Virus record (IMG/VR): IMGVR_UViG_3300032046_000001
Coordinates: 124,001-188,000 of that record
Reading direction: 5' to 3' (one strand)
DNA: 64,000 nucleotides
Made by a program: the position numbers and the translations under genes. Under the pieces are notes generated by a model. That model was given only the letters and a program-made list of their open reading frames with translations. It did not search any database and was not told where the DNA came from. Positions 10,035 to 63,464 of this stretch are shown in pieces (the stretch's first letter is position 1; each line of letters begins with the position of its first letter).

Positions 10035-11960
10035 TTGATGTCACTAAAAGACACTTTTACAAAATTAAAGACATCTATTGTCGGAACTAAGACTGTTTCC
10101 ATTGATACTAATCTCGACAATGCTATAAAAGATATATCTTCATTTAAAAATCAGACTGGACAACTTGGGTATATAGAACTCCTCAAAAGTTTAATATCAA
10201 AACAAAGTGATTTTAATCTTGGTAGTCAAAAATTCATGCAACATGGTGGGGCACCAAGTCCTGCTATGTATGGTCAAGCTAACCGATTGATGAGATATAA
10301 ATCATATAATGCCATATTTTCAAATATCTCATATTGTTATAGAGCATTGACAGTACTGGTAGACAATATTATTTCACCTGATGATATAACAAAACAATCA
10401 CTTGATATTAAACCAAAGTCATATTTAGAATCTGAAATAGAAACTGAATCAAAAACAGAATTGGTCAAAGAGGTTGTTAAGCAAACAAAACTTGAACAAA
10501 ATATTGATTTAATTGTCAAAAATGTTTTAGCTTATGGTGATTTCTTTGTTGAGATTGGTTCATCAAAAACTGCCTTGGTTAGCCGTGCGTATTTAATCGA
10601 ATCATATGGTAATGAGTATGCTCAGAATGAAGCCATTGATATACTAAATGTTAAAGATGATAATGAAAATAATCTCAGAATTATGATGGATTATACATCA
10701 TTCAATGAGTCTTCAAATGAGACTAAAGATGATAAAATGGACATCTCTGATATAAAATTAATGATGCATGATCCAAGGAATGTTATTAAATTACAGAGTG
10801 AGATGTTTCCGATATGTTTTGGTTATCTTGTATTTCCAAAATATATAATGAGTCATACAAATCAATTATCAGATCAAGCTATAAATGATATTTGTATATC
10901 GATATTAAAAAATCTGGAACAACGAATTCCAGACATGAAAGAATTTAGGGATAATAAAGAACTGCGAGATATTATCGCAACGATTGCTAGAGGAACAGAA
11001 TATGGTCTTGGGAGACAGGTTCAGATTAGATTTGTTCCAGCAGATAAGATGCAACACTTTAGAATTCCATCTACTAAATATTATCCCTATGGCGAATCTA
11101 TTATTGATTCGGTCACATTTCTTGGTAAGGTTTTAATCGCTCTTGAAACAGCTTTAACTATTCAAAGATTATCAAGATCAACTGAGAAATTTAAAATTGG
11201 TGTTGAGTTAGGGTTGCCAAGAGATGCTAGAAAAATTATTGATGGAATGCGCGAACAGTTCAAGAAAAGAAAAATAAGTATGGATTCTTTTGGTACTGTT
11301 GATACAATACCATCAATGATTACAACATTCGAGGATATATACATCCCTCAAAAAGATGGAAAACCATTTGTTGATATTGGAACCTTCAATGAAGGTCGTG
11401 TTGATATTAGAAGTAAAGTTGATGAACTTAAGTTTGTTCGGGATAGTTTAGTTGCTGCACTCGGTGTTCCACCTCCGCTTATTGGTATTGAAGAGAACGC
11501 ATCAATGAAAGCAACATTAGCAGAAGAGAATATACTGTTTGCAAGGACAATTGTTAGTCATCAAAAATATTTAACAAATCAAATAAACGATTTAATTAAA
11601 AAAATATTTCAATTAATTGATCCTGAAAGTTCATTAACATTATTGGATAATGTCTCAATAGCGTTTCCAACACCCAAATCTTTACAATTTGAACTTTTAT
11701 CTAGGAGAATGAACGACACAATTAATTTGATTGAAAGTTTAGAAAGAATTGGTATTCCAAAAGAATATTCAAAGAAGAAATATTTACAAGATATTGATTG
11801 GAACGATGTTGAAAATTTCCAAATTGATGGTGATATTGAAAAGAAATTGGGTATTGCTCCACCAGAAGACACTGGATTCGGTGGTGGTGGGTTTGCTATA
11901 GGAGGTGCTCAAGGTATGTCTGGAGTTCCTGGTACAGTTCCACCACAAACACAATATTAA
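10035..11960 (+). CDS. Portal protein (T4 gp20-like)
   Basis: YGDFFVE, YYPYGESII, LETALTIQRLSRSTE, EDIYIPQKDG, LVAALGVP; first gene of a portal-protease-capsid block. Confidence 0.85.
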   Translation: MMSLKDTFTKLKTSIVGTKTVSIDTNLDNAIKDISSFKNQTGQLGYIELLKSLISKQSDFNLGSQKFMQHGGAPSPAMYGQANRLMRYKSYNAIFSNISYCYRALTVLVDNIISPDDITKQSLDIKPKSYLESEIETESKTELVKEVVKQTKLEQNIDLIVKNVLAYGDFFVEIGSSKTALVSRAYLIESYGNEYAQNEAIDILNVKDDNENNLRIMMDYTSFNESSNETKDDKMDISDIKLMMHDPRNVIKLQSEMFPICFGYLVFPKYIMSHTNQLSDQAINDICISILKNLEQRIPDMKEFRDNKELRDIIATIARGTEYGLGRQVQIRFVPADKMQHFRIPSTKYYPYGESIIDSVTFLGKVLIALETALTIQRLSRSTEKFKIGVELGLPRDARKIIDGMREQFKKRKISMDSFGTVDTIPSMITTFEDIYIPQKDGKPFVDIGTFNEGRVDIRSKVDELKFVRDSLVAALGVPPPLIGIEENASMKATLAEENILFARTIVSHQKYLTNQINDLIKKIFQLIDPESSLTLLDNVSIAFPTPKSLQFELLSRRMNDTINLIESLERIGIPKEYSKKKYLQDIDWNDVENFQIDGDIEKKLGIAPPEDTGFGGGGFAIGGAQGMSGVPGTVPPQTQY

Positions 11961-11968
11961 AGTATAAT

Positions 11969-12059
11969 AGAGAGATAGAGAACGATCGCTCGAAAAGAAG
12001 TAATCCGAACTTCCTTCTCTCTTTAAATTTATCATTCGGAAAATAACCAAAAATCGGAG
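11969..12059 (+). ncRNA. Structured leader element, copy 2
   Basis: P1 11969-75/12016-22, P2 GAG/CTC, GAAAA, P3 GAAGT/ACTTC; loop TCCGA is complementary to TCGGA at 12036-40 and 12053-57 (over the SD GGAGG). Confidence 0.75.
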
Positions 12060-12067
12060 GTTATAAA

Positions 12068-12676
12068 ATGAAAATATTTGAAAATTTGGATTTAAAAGAT
12101 TTAGAAAATGAAATATGGAAAAATATTTTAGATTATGAAAATAATTATCAAATTAGTAATTCAGGACGAATTAAATCATTAAAATTTGGAAAAGAAAAAA
12201 TATTAAAACAGATCAAAGATAATTATAATTATTTTTTTATCAATTTGTGTAAAAATGGAAAATCTAAAATAAAATATATTCATCATCTTGTTTATGAAAC
12301 TTTCAAAGGAAAATTAGAAGAAGGTTATGATGCTCATCATATAAATGAAAATAAAGAAGATAATTTTGTTGGTAATTTAGAATCTAAACCACATAACGAA
12401 CATTCTAGTTTTCATAATAAAAATAAAATAGTTTCAGAAGAAACAAAAAAGAAAATATCTAAAAGTGGAAAAGGAAGAGCGGTTACAGAAGAAACAAGAA
12501 TTAAAATTAAAGGAAAAAATAATCCAAATTACAAAATAACAAATCAAAAAATTATTGATATCAGGATTGACATAGAAAAAAAATTAAGTCAAAGAAAAAT
12601 TGCTAATAAATACGATGTTAGTCAAACAACAGTTTCTAGTATAAAAACTGGAAAAGTTAGGGAGTTATATGAATAA
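12068..12676 (+). mobile_element. NUMOD4-HNH homing endonuclease
   Basis: IWKNILDYENNYQISNSGRIKS, AHHINENKEDN, C-terminal HTH (SQRKIANKYDVSQTTV). Confidence 0.88.
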
Positions 12677-13324: not shown

Positions 13325-13999
13325 ATGTCACATTTTATTATTGAGAGTGCAATATTCCAAGAAGCCAAACTTGTTAAAAATATTGGAAATAAAGCACGAT
13401 TTCGTATGATTATGCAAACAATGGATGAAAGTAACCAAAATAGAAGAATATATCCCAAAAATGTTTTAATGGAAGGCATGAAAGGTTGTGATGACAGAAT
13501 AAAATCAAGAAGTTTTGTGGGTGAAATGGATCATCCATTTCCTTCAGGCAATCACGATATTGATGCTGTAAGACAATCAACGGTTTCACTAAAAGAAGTT
13601 TCCCATTTAATCAATGAATATGGAGTTGATGGTAATAAATTGATGGGAGAACTTGAAACGCTTGATACCGATAATGGTAGAAAATTATTAGGATTATTAA
13701 AAGATCGTGTAGGCGCGGGGTTGTCTATGCGTGGAATGGCCGAACTCGAAAGAAATCGTGAGAATTATAATGTTGTTAAGGCACCATTAATGATAATCAC
13801 ATTTGATACTGTTTCAATGCCATCTCACAAAGCCGCTGTCGTTAACTTCAATGAATGTAGATTTGAATCAATGAGTCTTATTCAGGAAAGTTCATGTGGA
13901 ACTACAATATGTACACCCGATGGTAGATGTTACTTAGCAAATTATTTCGACAAATTAGTTGAAACTAAGATAATTCAATTTTCAAGTAACTGGGTTTAA
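13325..13999 (+). CDS. Prohead maturation protease (T4 gp21-like)
   Basis: NQNRRIYP, GEMDHP, VSH, GLSMRG, FDTVSMPS. Confidence 0.9.
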   Translation: MSHFIIESAIFQEAKLVKNIGNKARFRMIMQTMDESNQNRRIYPKNVLMEGMKGCDDRIKSRSFVGEMDHPFPSGNHDIDAVRQSTVSLKEVSHLINEYGVDGNKLMGELETLDTDNGRKLLGLLKDRVGAGLSMRGMAELERNRENYNVVKAPLMIITFDTVSMPSHKAAVVNFNECRFESMSLIQESSCGTTICTPDGRCYLANYFDKLVETKIIQFSSNWV

Positions 14000-14768: not shown

Positions 14769-14810
14769 TTCATTTTTTTAATTTTAGATACTTAATTGGA
14801 GGTTTTTCAA

Positions 14811-16274
14811 ATGTCTAGTAATACAAAAGAGATGCTTACCGAAGCCTATAGAACCACGAAAAAAATGAGTGGTTTTGATCCTTCTAAACCGGGTAATATT
14901 AGAAATATTATTACCGATGATACTGCTTTTAACACATATGTAGAAAGTTTAGCTGAGTCTATCAAAGACAAGACTGATAAGGAAGCTTTTAAACTTTTGG
15001 CTGAGAATACTCGAATTAACCTGTTGGAAAATTCGATGTTTCAGATCAATCCTTATGAATCTTTGACTTTGCCTATTCTTAGAATATTCTATCCTAAGCT
15101 TGTAGCTAAAGAAGCCATTACGGTTGCTCCTATGGATAAACCTGAGACGATTAAAGCTTTTATTACTGCAACTTTTAGTCCTTCTAATAGTTCTACTAAG
15201 TATACCGCACCTGTTATCAATACAGATATTTCTGGTGGTCCTTCAGTTGGTACGCCTGTAACGGCTGCTATGACTGTTCCTCAGACTGCTTATGATGTAT
15301 TGAATGTTGCTGGTGTAACCAGTACACAAGCTCACTTAGAGAGAGATTTTCAGATTACCGCTGTAACTGATGGTACTTCTTGGGTTAATGTTAATATCGT
15401 TCCTGCTGTTGAAGGTCATTTCAGTTCTTCTGTTACGACTCCTGGTGGTACTGATGTTCTTTCTGGTCAAGTTGATTATTTGAATGGTACTGTTGCTATA
15501 TCTAGTGCCACTAGTATTGTAACTTCTATTCGTTATCAGGTTACAATGTCTCTGGAAGAGAACCGAATCAATCCTCAAGTTAACTTGAACATTGATAAGG
15601 TACGTCTCTATGCTAAAGACAGACAGATTTCAGCGGCTTGGACCATCAACATGGAACAGGATATGCGAGCATTGTTCGACATATCTATGCAAGCTGAAAT
15701 TGTAAATATTCTTGGTCAGCAGATTGCTCTTGATATCGATCGTGAGATTGTTAACGCCTTGATTACTGGTAATACCAGATTGAATCCTGGTGCAACTCAT
15801 ACTGGTACATTCAATAGGACTCCTCCCGGAACCTATACTTGGGGCGAAAAATACTGGCATGAAAACATTATACCTGTGTTGAACGAATTGTCAGCTCAGA
15901 TCTATAATGATACCCATTTAGAGTCAGGTAATACCATTTTGGCTAATCCACTTGATGTTGCTATTCTTGAAGATCTTCAGGGATTCAACTATACTGGTAC
16001 GTCTTATGCTGATGGTGAGTTAGGTTATCGTTCTGCTGTTGTTGCTGGTGGCAAATGGAGAGTATTGACTAGTGCTGTTGTTTCACAAGGTACTATGATT
16101 GTTATCTATAAGCCAGTTGAAGAGTTGAAATGTATATACTTATACTGTCCGTATGTTCCTGCAATTTTACACCCATATCCATTATCTTACACTCCTACGT
16201 TGACAGTTCTGTCAAGGTATGCTACGAGTCTTGTAAGACCTTTGGGTATTTGTACGCTGTCTATTGGTGCGTAA
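14811..16274 (+). CDS. Major capsid protein (T4 gp23-like)
   Basis: VAPMDKP and AKDRQISAAWTINMEQDMRALFDISMQAEIVNILGQQIALDIDREIV resemble the gp23 core; ATG 14811 follows GGAGG. Confidence 0.9.
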   Translation: MSSNTKEMLTEAYRTTKKMSGFDPSKPGNIRNIITDDTAFNTYVESLAESIKDKTDKEAFKLLAENTRINLLENSMFQINPYESLTLPILRIFYPKLVAKEAITVAPMDKPETIKAFITATFSPSNSSTKYTAPVINTDISGGPSVGTPVTAAMTVPQTAYDVLNVAGVTSTQAHLERDFQITAVTDGTSWVNVNIVPAVEGHFSSSVTTPGGTDVLSGQVDYLNGTVAISSATSIVTSIRYQVTMSLEENRINPQVNLNIDKVRLYAKDRQISAAWTINMEQDMRALFDISMQAEIVNILGQQIALDIDREIVNALITGNTRLNPGATHTGTFNRTPPGTYTWGEKYWHENIIPVLNELSAQIYNDTHLESGNTILANPLDVAILEDLQGFNYTGTSYADGELGYRSAVVAGGKWRVLTSAVVSQGTMIVIYKPVEELKCIYLYCPYVPAILHPYPLSYTPTLTVLSRYATSLVRPLGICTLSIGA

Positions 16275-16330
16275 TTAAAATAAAAAAAATAATTTTTTAT
16301 TTTTATATTTAAAAAAAAGAGGTGATTCCA

Positions 16331-16396
16331 ATGGCTGGTAAAGGCGGTGGAAAACCCAAGGGAAAACCGAAGGGCAAACCCAAGGGTGGAAAATAA
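16331..16396 (+). CDS. 21-aa basic micro-ORF MAGKGGGKPKGKPKGKPKGGK (not in ORF track)
   Basis: SD GAGGTGA at 16319-25, ATG 16331, TAA 16394-96; synonymous variation among the three GKPK units. Confidence 0.7.
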   Translation: MAGKGGGKPKGKPKGKPKGGK

Positions 16397-16404
16397 GTAA
16401 ATTA

Positions 16405-16436
16405 AACAGCTCCTATGAGAAATCATAGGAGCTGTT
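16405..16436. terminator. 14-bp GAAA-tetraloop hairpin between convergent units
   Basis: AACAGCTCCTATGA-GAAA-TCATAGGAGCTGTT. Confidence 0.8.
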
Positions 16437-16537
16437 CTCTCACTTTTTATCCCATTTCATCTTAATATAAATTGTTAATACTATTGAAAATATAGTTGTT
16501 ATACTCCCAATTAATATTCCAATCAACACATCATCCA

Positions 16538-16921
16538 TTAGTCAATGTCATTTTCTACATAAGACATAATTTGTTGTATCGTTATATTGTGTATCACCAT
16601 CATCTCCAATATCTCATCTTTATCTGGATGATCATATTGTAATGCACGTTTTAGTTGAGATGTATACTGAATATCCCAACATAGATCAAAATCATATGGA
16701 AGAAGTGGATCTGTTGGATTGGGAAAATCGTATAAATCATTTCTTAATTGCCAAGTACTAAATTCTTCAAGATTTACACAGCGACTATTTTTCAATGTTT
16801 CATCAACATATGAAACAGTTTTTTCAGTTCCATCCCAGTGGTATGTTCTGACGATACTCCCATCTGGTCGTTCATATAAAGCACCGAGAACAACACCACC
16901 AACTCTGACAGTAATAGACAT
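16538..16921 (-). CDS. Hypothetical protein
   Basis: 127 aa, SD AAGGAAG, overlaps the coaB-like stop by 1 nt. Confidence 0.65.
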   Translation of the reverse strand: MSITVRVGGVVLGALYERPDGSIVRTYHWDGTEKTVSYVDETLKNSRCVNLEEFSTWQLRNDLYDFPNPTDPLLPYDFDLCWDIQYTSQLKRALQYDHPDKDEILEMMVIHNITIQQIMSYVENDID

Positions 16922-17673
16922 TATTCTTCCTTTCTATGTAATAATTCTTGATTGATTAAGTCATACAGAGTAGAATTTAGAGTGTCTCTATTCACATCAG
17001 CAATAGAACCATTTTTTGAAATTATAACTGCTCTTTGACTATACCACTCAAGACAATTAGCAACAATAAAATCGGCATCCGATTGTCTCATACTTTTAAG
17101 AGCTATATCAATAAGTTGTTGATCTGATTTCTGACTTTCAAGTTTAAACTTAACAAGAATTCCTTTAAAACCCCATTCAGTTTTAATAAGATCAACAATC
17201 TTTGGAAGAGGAACTAATTTCAAATATAATTCTTTTCTTCCTGATTTAATCTTTGGTTCATTAATTGGCCACATCATTGGATTACCAGTATCATCATAAC
17301 CCATTTCATAAGCACCATCAACACCATAATCACTAACGGCTGCTGAATGAATTATAACATCATATTGAAATGGTGTTTCTCCGGTCATAACAGGTTGATC
17401 GGCCAATTCGCGTTGAATACTATCCTTTAATTCATCAAATGTTCTATATTGAATAACATTGATATCTATGTAATCCCATTCAAGTGATCGAATGCTTTCT
17501 TCTGCATATTCAATTAATGGTCTGGAATTTAAAAGAGTAACAACAGCACCCTGTTCAAGAAAGTATTTTGCAATCTTAGTACCAGACTTACCAGTGAATA
17601 TATTACTTATTCTTCTTACGTTGTCAATACGGGAACAAGTACTACCTCCCGTTATCAGCGTTCGTATTCTCAC
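16921..17673 (-). CDS. coaB: Phosphopantothenate-cysteine ligase (CoaB domain)
   Basis: LITGGST..IDNVRRISNIFTGKSG, HSAAVSDY, PKI, LVKFKLE, DFIVAN. Confidence 0.85.
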   Translation of the reverse strand: MRIRTLITGGSTCSRIDNVRRISNIFTGKSGTKIAKYFLEQGAVVTLLNSRPLIEYAEESIRSLEWDYIDINVIQYRTFDELKDSIQRELADQPVMTGETPFQYDVIIHSAAVSDYGVDGAYEMGYDDTGNPMMWPINEPKIKSGRKELYLKLVPLPKIVDLIKTEWGFKGILVKFKLESQKSDQQLIDIALKSMRQSDADFIVANCLEWYSQRAVIISKNGSIADVNRDTLNSTLYDLINQELLHRKEE

Positions 17674-29867: not shown

Positions 29868-29948
29868 AGAGAGAATAGGGTGCGCACCCGAAAAGATACC
29901 AACTCCAGTATTTTTCTCTCTTTATTTTTTTGGAAATTAACTAAGGAG
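29868..29948 (+). ncRNA. Structured leader element, copy 4
   Basis: P1 29868-75/29914-21, P2 GGGT/ACCC, GAAAA, P3 GATAC/GTATT; loop CTCCA is complementary to TGGA (29931-34) and the SD GGAG (29945-48). Confidence 0.7.
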
Positions 29949-29953
29949 AGTTA

Positions 29954-48551: not shown

Positions 48552-48637
48552 TAATTGAGAGATAGAACCCATGATTCGAAAAGAGAAAACCTTGATTCTC
48601 CTGCTCTCAGTTACTATCAAGGAATAACAACAAGGAG
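48552..48637 (+). ncRNA. Structured leader element, copy 5
   Basis: P1 48552-61/48604-13, P2 GAA/TTC, GAAAA, P3 GAGAA/TTCTC; loop CCTTGA is complementary to TCAAGG (48617-22) and CAAGG (48631-35, over the SD AAGGAG). Confidence 0.78.
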
Positions 48638-48647
48638 TTATTAAAAA

Positions 48648-57410: not shown

Positions 57411-57495
57411 AGAGGGATAGAACTCATGATTCGAAAAGAAGTAGTCCCTAACTTCCTTCTCTCTCTTTATTATATTTAGGGAAAATTTAAGGGAG
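57411..57495 (+). ncRNA. Structured leader element, copy 6
   Basis: P1 57411-17/57458-64, P2 GAA/TTC, GAAAA, P3 GAAGT/ACTTC; loop TCCCTA is complementary to TAGGGA (57477-82) and AGGGA (57490-94, over the SD). Confidence 0.78.
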
Positions 57496-57502
57496 AATTA
57501 AA

Positions 57503-62789: not shown

Positions 62790-63464
62790 ATGGATGATAC
62801 GCAAAAACAAAATTTTCAAATCGAGATATTTGAACAATACGGAGAACATTGTTTAAAAGACTGTCTTGGTTTAGTTGAAACTTCAGATCGAAAACCCAAG
62901 GGTTATGTAGAAATATATGAAATGACTCCTGAAGGTGAAAAGAAATTAGTTGGTAAATCTAATCTTGTACTTTATACAGGACGAGAATTTGTAGCACAAT
63001 CTATTTTTGGTGTTGACAATCCCGCCGTAACATCATCATATAATGATCATATTTTTTGGTTTGGTGTTGGTGATGGTGGTGCTCCGATATTAGATCCATT
63101 GACACCAACTGCACCTACAAATACAGATACAGGTTTGGGAAATGATGTTGTAATAAGTTCTGATAGTACAAATGCTGATTATCGGATAACTCCAGTTGCT
63201 GGTTATTATAAGAAACCAATTTATTCAGTTGAATATCAACAAGATGTTTATAATAACAATTCATATTTAATAGCAAAAGTTACTATGATATTAGATGCTG
63301 GTGATTCAGATGGTTATAATATAAGTGAAGCTGGATTATTTGCCTCACCTTCATCCGCAGGTGGATCTTCTGGACCGTTTACATGTTACGCTAGGGTAAC
63401 TTTTCCATCTATTGTCAAAACTACAGCAAGAATTTTAACTATTATTTGGTATGTATTTTGTTGA
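62790..63464 (+). CDS. Putative tail/baseplate structural protein
   Basis: NLVLYTGRE, FGVGDGG, ISEAGLF, ARVTFPSIVK, similar to tail-fibre/baseplate N-terminal domains. Confidence 0.55.
   Translation: MDDTQKQNFQIEIFEQYGEHCLKDCLGLVETSDRKPKGYVEIYEMTPEGEKKLVGKSNLVLYTGREFVAQSIFGVDNPAVTSSYNDHIFWFGVGDGGAPILDPLTPTAPTNTDTGLGNDVVISSDSTNADYRITPVAGYYKKPIYSVEYQQDVYNNNSYLIAKVTMILDAGDSDGYNISEAGLFASPSSAGGSSGPFTCYARVTFPSIVKTTARILTIIWYVFC

What the first reader, a model, noticed from the sequence alone, without database searches (positions are those of the whole stretch)
16319..16436. Unannotated 21-aa lysine-rich micropeptide directly after the major capsid gene
Seen: strong SD GAGGTGA, ATG, MAGKGGGKPKGKPKGKPKGGK, TAA, then the terminator hairpin. 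The three GKPK units use different synonymous codons (GGA AAA CCC AAG / GGA AAA CCG AAG / GGC AAA CCC AAG), and the ORF is GC-rich within a poly-A/T spacer. Inference: co-expressed with the MCP as a protamine- or histone-tail-like DNA-condensing peptide inside the head.
Basis: partly seen in the sequence, partly recalled or inferred. Interest (0 to 1): 0.65.

Follow-up and report, generated by a model that had tools for sequence, protein, structure and literature searches.

The report
Conserved polylysine micro-gene after capsid gene
A 21-codon gene for an extremely basic Gly/Lys/Pro peptide sits between the major capsid gene and its terminator in one narrow clade of uncultured 312-kb jumbo phages; it evolves like a real protein-coding gene, but what the peptide does (DNA charge neutralisation in the head is the best guess) is untested.

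Summary
The SD GAGGTGA (16319-16325), ATG (16331), the ORF MAGKGGGKPKGKPKGKPKGGK, the TAA (16394-16396) and a 15-bp hairpin (16404-16437) lie 56 nt after a T4 gp23-type major capsid gene.

The ORF is not a chance frame. All 12 contigs with MCP at least 94% identical and complete downstream DNA carry it, from sediment, soil and groundwater samples. Each keeps the SD, ATG, stop and hairpin.

Among the three-repeat forms, 9 of 10 variable columns are synonymous third positions. Length varies only by whole KPKG units, giving 16, 21-22 or 25 aa.

None of the roughly 88 relatives at 86% MCP identity or less has it. In those, the capsid stop runs straight to the homologous terminator. So this is a young, lineage-restricted micro-gene that gene callers miss.

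It has no match in Pfam, PHROGs, NCBIfam, PDB or Rfam, and no other micropeptide with the repeat was found except one unconserved 14-aa ORF beside a portal gene (L111).

Co-transcription with the capsid gene is supported by architecture only. A role as a head-internal DNA counter-ion is plausible, because T4 heads use lysyl amines and polyamines. It is unproven: there is no capsid-targeting sequence, at equimolar expression it would neutralise only about 2% of DNA charge, and sister phages do without it.

The parts
14811..16274 (+). Major capsid protein gene (T4 gp23 type). The likely start is the ATG at 14811 behind GGAGG; the ORF lister gives the TTG at 14796.
   Evidence: Pfam PF07068 E = 6e-33. 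phrog_20655 E = 5e-45. Upstream sequence. Relatives align from residue 11 onward of the 492-aa TTG-start query, i.e. past the 5 residues that precede the ATG.
16275..16318 (+). Spacer and leader made only of A and T, between the capsid stop and the SD. It is nearly invariant in the clade apart from homopolymer length.
   Evidence: Sequence. Window versus L031 shows 1 substitution and 4 one-base indels. In the same pair, 7 of 21 third positions differ in the ORF and 115 of 493 in the MCP.
16319..16325 (+). Shine-Dalgarno sequence GAGGTGA, 5 nt before the ATG. The L031-type relatives have AAGGTGA or GAGGTGA with a 6-nt spacer.
   Evidence: The genome uses SD motifs: AGGA is upstream of 42% of long ORFs, against 4% background.
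16331..16396 (+). Micro-gene of 21 codons plus TAA. The peptide is MAGKGGGKPKGKPKGKPKGGK (1,993 Da, 8 Lys, no acidic or hydrophobic side chains apart from Met1 and Ala2).
   Evidence: Conserved in 12 of 12 close relatives. 9 of 10 variable columns are synonymous third positions.
16349..16384 (+). Three tandem 12-nt units (GGN AAR CCS AAR, coding GKPK). Copy number is 2, 3 or 4 in relatives.
   Evidence: A 12-nt insertion behind 16348 is seen in a soil-metagenome contig.
16404..16437 (.). Hairpin of 15 base pairs with a 4-nt loop, shared by the convergent + and - strand transcription units. It probably acts as an intrinsic terminator or as an mRNA 3' end protector.
   Evidence: flagged on the - strand. 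(fold z = -6.7 for 16270-16450). (4 of 15 pairs show compensatory double changes; none is broken in the core).

Best explanation
This is a real, recently gained protein-coding micro-gene. It is transcribed on the tail of the major capsid mRNA. It is translated from its own strong SD, which sits behind an unstructured A/U-only leader. It ends a few bases before the operon's terminator hairpin.

The product is a 16-25 aa intrinsically disordered polycation, (M)AGKGGG-(KPKG)n-(G)K(K), with net charge about +5.5 to +9.5. The only plausible chemistry for such a peptide is electrostatic binding to a polyanion.

I take the phage's own DNA to be the most likely target. The peptide would be made late, together with capsid protein, and would act as a lysine counter-ion. 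It would travel with, or bind to, DNA as it is packaged, lowering DNA self-repulsion in a very large (312 kb) T4-type head. This resembles the lysyl amines of T4 internal proteins and the polyamines in T4 heads.

Shown:
- the ORF, SD and hairpin are present;
- purifying selection acts on the peptide;
- the gene is restricted to one clade;
- the repeat number varies.

Inferred:
- co-transcription with the capsid gene;
- high expression;
- DNA binding;
- presence in the virion.
For: Coding status:
- The ORF, SD, ATG and stop are intact in all 12 loci with MCP identity of at least 94% and complete downstream DNA. They come from independent sediment, soil and groundwater assemblies.
- There are 10 variable columns in the first 20 codons. 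Nine are third-position and synonymous; one is non-synonymous and found in a single contig.
- For the window-L031 pair, 7 of 8 changes are synonymous. The probability without coding constraint is 3e-4 to 3e-3.
- Third-position divergence is 33% in the ORF and 23% in the adjacent MCP.
- The minus-strand 79-aa ORF over the same DNA is broken by stops in L031.
- The in-frame GTG at 16322 is out of frame in L031-type relatives, so the ATG is the start.

Operon architecture:
- No hairpin lies between the MCP stop and the ORF.
- The single hairpin after the ORF has 4 compensatory pairs.
- The genome uses SD-led initiation.

Polycation:
- 8 of 21 residues are Lys, there are no Asp or Glu, and pI is 10.8.

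Precedent:
- In T4 heads the DNA phosphate charge is balanced by lysyl amines of internal proteins, polyamines and cations. This was proposed to speed packaging (PMC3012670).
Against: - There is no expression or proteomic evidence. No RNA run holds the sequence.
- The peptide has no N-terminal capsid-targeting sequence and no Glu, so it has no gp21-type cleavage motif. The T4 route of internal proteins into the prohead is therefore not available (sequence).
- The genome has 624,840 phosphates. At +8 per peptide, about 7,800 copies are needed for 10% neutralisation. At one copy per capsid subunit (roughly 1,600, my estimate from phages of similar genome size) it would cover about 2%.
- Relatives with a homologous capsid gene (MCP 86% identical or less) lack it entirely, so it is accessory. 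That includes five large contigs with no KPKGKP-coding stretch anywhere.
- The Pro codons CCC and CCG and the Gly codon GGC are rare in this genome (4.5-8% of their families). This is not what is expected of a gene tuned for very high expression.
- The repeat number and C-terminus vary, so the constraint is on composition rather than on a specific structure.
Confidence: 0.35

Rival explanations
1. A real polycationic peptide whose target is not packaged DNA. It could bind acidic phage assembly proteins: the capsid protein (pI 5.1) or the acidic 217-aa protein encoded just before the prohead protease (pI 4.3). Or it could bind RNA or ribosomes. In either case it would act as an assembly or expression modulator late in infection.
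For: The same coding and operon evidence applies. The head-module neighbours are acidic. An unrelated viral contig, L111, has an SD-led micro-ORF MGKKGKPKGKPKGK whose stop abuts the start of a portal gene. That is a second GKPK micro-ORF in a head module.
Against: No specific interaction surface can be inferred from a Gly/Lys/Pro repeat. Variation between 2 and 4 repeats argues against a fitted protein-protein interface. The L111 case is a single contig with no relatives to test conservation.
Confidence: 0.2
2. A late-made polycation that acts on the host envelope or on host defences. It could displace divalent cations from LPS or teichoic acids once the holin has opened the membrane, as an aid to lysis. 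Or it could bind an anionic host factor or signal.
For: Late co-expression with structural genes is compatible with a lysis-stage role. Polycations are known to destabilise outer membranes (general knowledge, not tested here).
Against: The peptide has no hydrophobic or amphipathic character, no signal peptide, and is not in a lysis cassette. The downstream genes are convergent and unrelated: a DFP-domain protein and hypotheticals.
Confidence: 0.08
3. The act of translating the ORF matters, not the peptide. A ribosome that stops 7 nt (3-8 nt in relatives) before the hairpin would modulate termination or protect the 3' end of the capsid mRNA. Alternatively, the 12-nt repeats are DNA- or RNA-level binding sites.
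For: The stop codon lies within a ribosome footprint of the base of the hairpin in all variants. The A/U leader is more conserved than synonymous sites. In two unrelated viral contigs, similar GGTAAACC repeats are clearly non-coding (L115 and L117).
Against: A cis-only role would tolerate non-synonymous changes, yet 9 of 10 variable columns are synonymous. All variation within the six compared repeat units falls at unit positions 3, 6, 9 and 12, the codon third positions. That is not expected of a binding site. Nothing lies downstream on the + strand to be regulated by read-through. There is no Rfam match.
Confidence: 0.1
4. A translated but functionless young ORF. It would have arisen by expansion of a 12-nt repeat in the capsid gene's 3' UTR and be kept only by short divergence time.
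For: Very narrow distribution (MCP at least 94% identical), atypical codon usage, variable repeat number and variable C-terminus.
Against: The excess of synonymous changes is significant at a divergence where the MCP has already changed 23% of its third positions. The SD and ATG are kept in every member.
Confidence: 0.07

Closest known systems
T4 internal proteins IPI, IPII and IPIII (about 1,000 copies per head), together with head polyamines
   Same: They occur in T4 gp23-type heads. Lysine side chains contact DNA phosphates and share charge neutralisation with polyamines. They are made late with the head proteins (PMC3012670).
   Different: T4 internal proteins are folded proteins of roughly 8-20 kDa. 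They carry an N-terminal capsid-targeting sequence, enter the scaffolding core and are trimmed by the prohead protease. The micro-peptide has no such sequence, no Glu, no homology to them, and is about 2 kDa.
Adenovirus Mu peptide (about 19 aa, from pX) and other viral core polycations such as adenovirus protein VII and baculovirus P6.9 (from my own knowledge; PMC6669607 and PMC10081844 surfaced but were not read)
   Same: A polycationic peptide of about 20 residues, encoded by a dsDNA virus, that condenses the genome in the particle.
   Different: Those are Arg-rich, belong to eukaryotic viruses, and in the case of Mu are released from a precursor by the viral protease. This one is Lys-rich, is translated directly as a micro-ORF in a tailed phage, and its presence in the virion is unknown.
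Phage small proteins (under 100 aa) as a class
   Same: A short, unannotated phage ORF missed by gene callers. Such ORFs are now known to be very numerous (PMC11323111).
   Different: The characterised examples in that review act on host regulation, quorum sensing or lysis-lysogeny. None is a Lys/Gly/Pro repeat peptide in a head operon ('capsid' and 'lysine' do not occur in its text). At 16-25 aa this one is below the length most catalogues consider.
Minor-groove-binding basic repeats (SPKK motifs of histone H1 tails; AT-hook RGRP core), from my own knowledge
   Same: Short Pro- and Gly-containing basic repeats that bind AT-rich DNA. This genome is 71% AT.
   Different: The motif here is KPKG, with no Ser and no Arg. 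The AT-hook core R-G-R-P is absent. Binding was not tested.

Membership tests
Protein-coding gene (bacterial or phage type) | Ribosome-binding site at a proper distance, a start codon, an open frame and a stop, all conserved in relatives | tested here: met
   GAGGTGA or AAGGTGA lies 5-6 nt before the ATG, and the frame is intact in 12 of 12 close relatives.
Protein-coding gene (bacterial or phage type) | Substitutions concentrated at synonymous third positions (purifying selection on the product) | tested here: met
   9 of 10 variable columns are synonymous third positions. Pairwise, 7 of 8 changes are synonymous, P = 3e-4 to 3e-3.
Protein-coding gene (bacterial or phage type) | Evidence of transcription and translation | not testable with these tools
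   No RNA run holds the stretch. All runs that were laid were DNA contigs.
Intrinsic (Rho-independent) terminator | GC-containing hairpin supported by covariation | tested here: met
   15 pairs, 4 of them with compensatory double changes.
Intrinsic (Rho-independent) terminator | Uninterrupted U tract directly after the stem | tested here: inconclusive
   On the + strand the tail is TCTCTCACTTTTT, which fails the scan's T-run rule. Only the - strand orientation was flagged. Relatives have TTTTCTC or TTTTTTCTC tails.
T4-type internal (head) proteins | N-terminal capsid-targeting sequence removed by the prohead protease | tested here: not met
   The N-terminus is MAGKGGG. There is no Glu and no hydrophobic residues that could form a targeting or cleavage motif (definition from PMC3012670).
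T4-type internal (head) proteins | Sequence similarity to known internal proteins or any phage family | tested here: not met
   No Pfam, PHROGs, NCBIfam or PDB match at E = 10 or below, apart from one meaningless PDB hit at E = 3.2.
Viral DNA-condensing polycations (protamine-like or Mu-like) | Very high fraction of basic residues and no acidic residues | tested here: met
   38% Lys, 0 Asp or Glu, pI 10.8.
Viral DNA-condensing polycations (protamine-like or Mu-like) | Present in the virion bound to the genome, and condenses DNA in vitro | not testable with these tools
   This needs virion mass spectrometry and a DNA-binding assay with the peptide. At 21 aa it is below the size limits of the structure and complex tools.
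AT-hook | Core R-G-R-P flanked by basic residues | tested here: not met
   The peptide contains no Arg.

The most novel reading that the evidence does not exclude
A tailed phage encodes its own 'protamine': a free-standing micro-gene of about 2 kDa. Its polylysine-like product would be made with the capsid protein and packaged with, or loaded onto, the genome. It would substitute for or supplement host polyamines in a 312-kb head. The KPKG repeat number would tune the charge. This would be the first directly translated genome-neutralising micropeptide described in a tailed phage, caught soon after its birth from a 12-nt repeat in the capsid gene's 3' UTR.
Probability: 0.25. Interest if true: 0.75.

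Novelty: new variant of a known kind. Interest (0 to 1): 0.55.

Why it matters
If the peptide is a packaged DNA counter-ion, phages can evolve charge-neutralising agents for genome packaging as tiny genes that every gene caller misses. That would give a simple, synthesisable model for how polycations affect packaging force, head pressure and ejection in giant phages.

Whatever the function, this is a clean natural example of very recent micro-gene birth. The gene is absent at 86% capsid identity or less and fixed at 94% or more. It already shows purifying selection and repeat-number variation. It is also a reminder that 3' UTRs of highly expressed phage genes can hide translated ORFs.

Tried and rejected
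- Minus-strand 79-aa ORF (16187-16426). Rejected: it overlaps the MCP 3' end and is interrupted by stops in L031.
- GTG 16322 as the start. Rejected: it is out of frame in L031-type relatives.
- Read-through or frameshift fusion to the MCP. Rejected: the frames differ and the A/T spacer is full of stops.
- Known RNA family. None found: the Rfam E-value scan of 16000-16800 gave only sub-threshold noise, and the gathering scan of the whole window gave nothing.
- Long-range pairing of the SD with the post-hairpin sequence, predicted. Not pursued: the partner sequence is not conserved in L031.
- Homologues elsewhere:
  - A blastn of the MCP region against cultured and GenBank phages gave no match.
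  - The MCP's nearest cultured relatives are only 24% identical (Bacillus phages AR9 and PBS1).
  - Degenerate DNA patterns for (GKPK)3 and GKPKGKPKG gave 4 and 21 hits in IMG/VR. Nearly all are low-complexity linkers in larger, unrelated proteins.
  - The N-terminal pattern gave 0 hits.
  - In 185,579 prokaryote genomes there were 105 hits with a median frame of 218 aa, and none is a Met-led micropeptide.
  - Five large relatives have no KPKGKP-coding stretch anywhere.
- Paralogues in the same genome. None. The near-match at window position 62889 is just DRKPKGY inside a 224-aa protein.
The structure, atlas and complex tools need at least 30 aa, so they were not used.
- A promoter in the spacer. 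The sigma-70 scan and motif counts gave nothing specific.
- L111's GKPK micro-ORF before a portal gene. Conservation could not be tested because no relatives were found.
- Literature search for the motif gave 0 papers.

Full report
**Setting.** The window is bases 124001-188000 of a 312,420-bp virus record with direct terminal repeats and 28.6% GC. Around the finding lies a T4-type head module on the + strand:
- a portal gene (10035-11960, Pfam Portal_T4);
- an inserted HNH/NUMOD endonuclease gene (12068-12676);
- a gene for an acidic 217-aa protein;
- the prohead protease gene (13325-13999, Peptidase_S77);
- two small coiled-coil-like ORFs;
- a gp23-type major capsid gene (PF07068 E = 6e-33; phrog_20655 E = 5e-45).

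The capsid gene most likely starts at the ATG at 14811 behind GGAGG and stops at 16272-16274. The nearest cultured phages (Bacillus AR9 and PBS1) share only 24% MCP identity. This is therefore an uncultured jumbo-phage lineage.

**The observation.**
- a 44-nt stretch of pure A/T after the capsid stop;
- GAGGTGA at 16319-16325;
- the ATG at 16331;
- MAGKGGGKPKGKPKGKPKGGK;
- TAA at 16394-16396;
- seven bases later, a 15-bp hairpin with a GAAA loop (16404-16437).

The three GKPK units differ only at third codon positions. The ORF is 50% GC in a spacer of 0-7% GC. It is the only SD-led Gly/Lys/Pro/Arg-rich small ORF in the whole genome. The genome does use SD-led initiation: AGGA lies upstream of 42% of long ORFs, against 4% background.

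**Is it a gene?** I collected 114 loci with a homologous capsid gene from IMG/VR, JGI metagenomes, and NCBI, ENA and Logan assemblies. The result is sharp.
- All 12 loci with MCP at least 94% identical and complete downstream DNA carry the ORF, with its SD, ATG, stop and hairpin. A thirteenth, L234, ends inside the ORF.
- None of the roughly 88 loci at 86% or less carries it. In those, the capsid stop is followed by a short A-rich spacer and the homologous hairpin.
- Five large relatives (223-277 kb) have no KPKGKP-coding stretch anywhere.

The holders come from several independent sediment, soil and groundwater studies.

There are seven distinct complete nucleotide versions of the ORF. They encode:
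- 16 aa (two KPKG units, L233);
- 21 aa (window, L235 and L243);
- 22 aa (C-terminal KK in L031 and L239-241; NK in L242);
- 25 aa (four units, L236-238). The same 12-nt insertion was seen when a soil run's contig was laid on the window.

Among the three-unit forms, 10 columns of the first 60 nt vary. Nine are third positions and synonymous. One (Gly6 to Cys) occurs in a single contig.

For the window-L031 pair, 7 of 8 changes are synonymous, where 24-33% would be expected without coding constraint (P = 3e-4 to 3e-3). Third-position divergence is 33% in the ORF, similar to the 23% of the adjacent capsid gene.

The competing minus-strand ORF is broken in L031. The in-frame GTG in the SD is out of frame in the L031 type. 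I conclude that the ATG-led frame is translated and the peptide sequence is under purifying selection. No gene caller had called it in any of the related contigs.

**The surrounding signals.** The hairpin is real. Of its 15 pairs, four show compensatory double changes and none is broken in the core. One relative has the loop inverted. It sits between convergent transcription units and is flagged by the simple scan only on the minus strand, because the + strand tail (TCTCTCACTTTTT) is an imperfect T tract. No hairpin separates the capsid stop from the ORF. The simplest reading is therefore one mRNA carrying capsid gene, micro-gene and terminator.

The A/T-only leader is strikingly conserved. 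Window versus L031 shows 1 substitution plus 4 homopolymer-length changes in about 56 nt. That is far less change than at synonymous sites. It could reflect a function as an unstructured, A/U-rich translation enhancer (inference from general knowledge), or simply mutational equilibrium in an AT-rich genome.

Codon usage of the ORF is atypical. CCC, CCG and GGC are each 4.5-8% of their codon families in this genome, and AAG is used for 3 of 8 Lys against 16% genome-wide.

**What the peptide is like.** It has a mass of 1,993 Da (1,862 Da if Met1 is removed, as expected before Ala) and pI 10.8. It contains 8 Lys, 8 Gly and 3 Pro, with no acidic, aromatic or aliphatic residues beyond Ala2. It must be disordered, and it can only act by electrostatics. 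It matches nothing in Pfam, PHROGs, NCBIfam or the PDB, and the DNA matches no Rfam family.

Pattern scans for the repeat in 2.9 million viral contigs and 185,579 prokaryote genomes returned almost only low-complexity linkers inside larger, unrelated proteins. The N-terminal pattern returned nothing. The motif occurs in no paper of the library.

There was one exception. In the unrelated viral contig L111, an SD-led ORF MGKKGKPKGKPKGK ends one base before the start of a portal gene. This is suggestive of a second, independent GKPK micro-ORF in a head module. I found no relatives with which to test its conservation.

**Mechanism.** The position points to late, abundant synthesis together with head proteins, and the chemistry points to a polyanion target.

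The best precedent is T4 itself. Solid-state NMR showed that DNA phosphate charge in the head is balanced by lysyl amines of the internal proteins, polyamines and cations, and this was proposed to aid fast packaging (PMC3012670). I therefore rank 'lysine counter-ion for the phage's own DNA during or after packaging' first.

My confidence in that is only about one in three, for these reasons:
- The peptide lacks the capsid-targeting sequence that defines T4 internal proteins. It would have to ride in on the DNA or bind the acidic core.
- The genome has 624,840 phosphates. About 7,800 peptides would be needed for 10% neutralisation, which is several-fold more than the number of capsid subunits expected for such a head (my estimate).
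- Sister lineages with a homologous capsid gene (MCP identity 86% or less) do without it.

The rivals are:
- binding to acidic head-assembly proteins or to RNA or ribosomes;
- an envelope-directed or defence-directed polycation;
- a cis role of translation next to the terminator, which is disfavoured by the synonymous-only variation;
- a functionless young ORF, which is disfavoured by the same statistics.

**Comparison with the known.** It would work like T4 internal proteins and polyamines, or like the adenovirus Mu core peptide. It is a member of neither. The defining targeting sequence and any homology were tested and not met. Mu is an Arg-rich cleavage product of a eukaryotic virus. It also lacks the AT-hook core.

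It belongs to the broad, known class of phage small proteins (PMC11323111). It is unusual there because of its size (16-25 aa), its pure Gly/Lys/Pro repeat, its head-operon position and its demonstrable recent origin.

I rate it a new variant of a known kind. The existence of the gene is well supported, and the proposed function is open.

**Limits.**
- No RNA or protein evidence was available.
- The peptide is too short for the homology, structure, atlas and complex tools.
- Conservation rests on seven haplotypes of one shallow clade.

Noticed in passing
window ~1120-1189, ~11990-12067, ~29890-29953, ~48590-48647 and ~57440-57502; genome-wide about 10 copies on both strands: A repeated intergenic element of about 70 nt (AAGAGAGATAGAGA ... 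CTCGAAAAGAAGTAATCCGAAACTTCCTTCTCTCTTTA ... TTCGGAA ... GGAGnTTATAA-ATG) sits immediately 5' of several genes, including the HNH/NUMOD endonuclease inserted between the portal and protease genes. It looks like a structured leader or a terminator-promoter cassette that travels with mobile genes. No Rfam family matches.
   Followed up: partly
L111 (IMGVR_UViG_3300009085_001027), minus strand, about 1119-1163: In an unrelated viral contig (43% GC), an SD-led 14-codon ORF MGKKGKPKGKPKGK ends one base before the ATG of a portal gene (phrog_1216). This may be a second GKPK micropeptide in a head module. No relatives were found to test conservation.
   Followed up: partly
window 12068-12676: A free-standing HNH + NUMOD homing-endonuclease gene is inserted in the head module between the portal gene and the acidic protein and protease genes.
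   Followed up: no
window 16921-17673 (minus strand): A phage gene with a DFP domain (C-terminal domain of the DNA/pantothenate metabolism flavoprotein, PF04127, E = 3e-23) converges on the capsid operon. It is conserved downstream of the hairpin in the close relatives, although small ORFs between it and the hairpin come and go.
   Followed up: no
window 15947-16600, versus run X7: One sediment contig differs from the window at 26 positions within 15947-16166 (the MCP 3' part) but is identical from 16167 to 16600. That looks like a recombination mosaic with a breakpoint inside the capsid gene.
   Followed up: no
L240:3090-3138 versus L239 and L241: The loop of the terminator hairpin is inverted (TTTC instead of GAAA) in one otherwise near-identical relative, as expected from a hairpin or cruciform flip.
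   Followed up: no
L115 and L117 (IMG/VR contigs): Tandem GGTAAACCNAAA repeats there translate as GKPK but lack a start codon. In L115 they sit among inverted GGTTTACC/GGTAAACC copies, so they look like DNA-level repeats (iteron-like). This is a caution that GKPK-coding repeats are not always coding.
   Followed up: no
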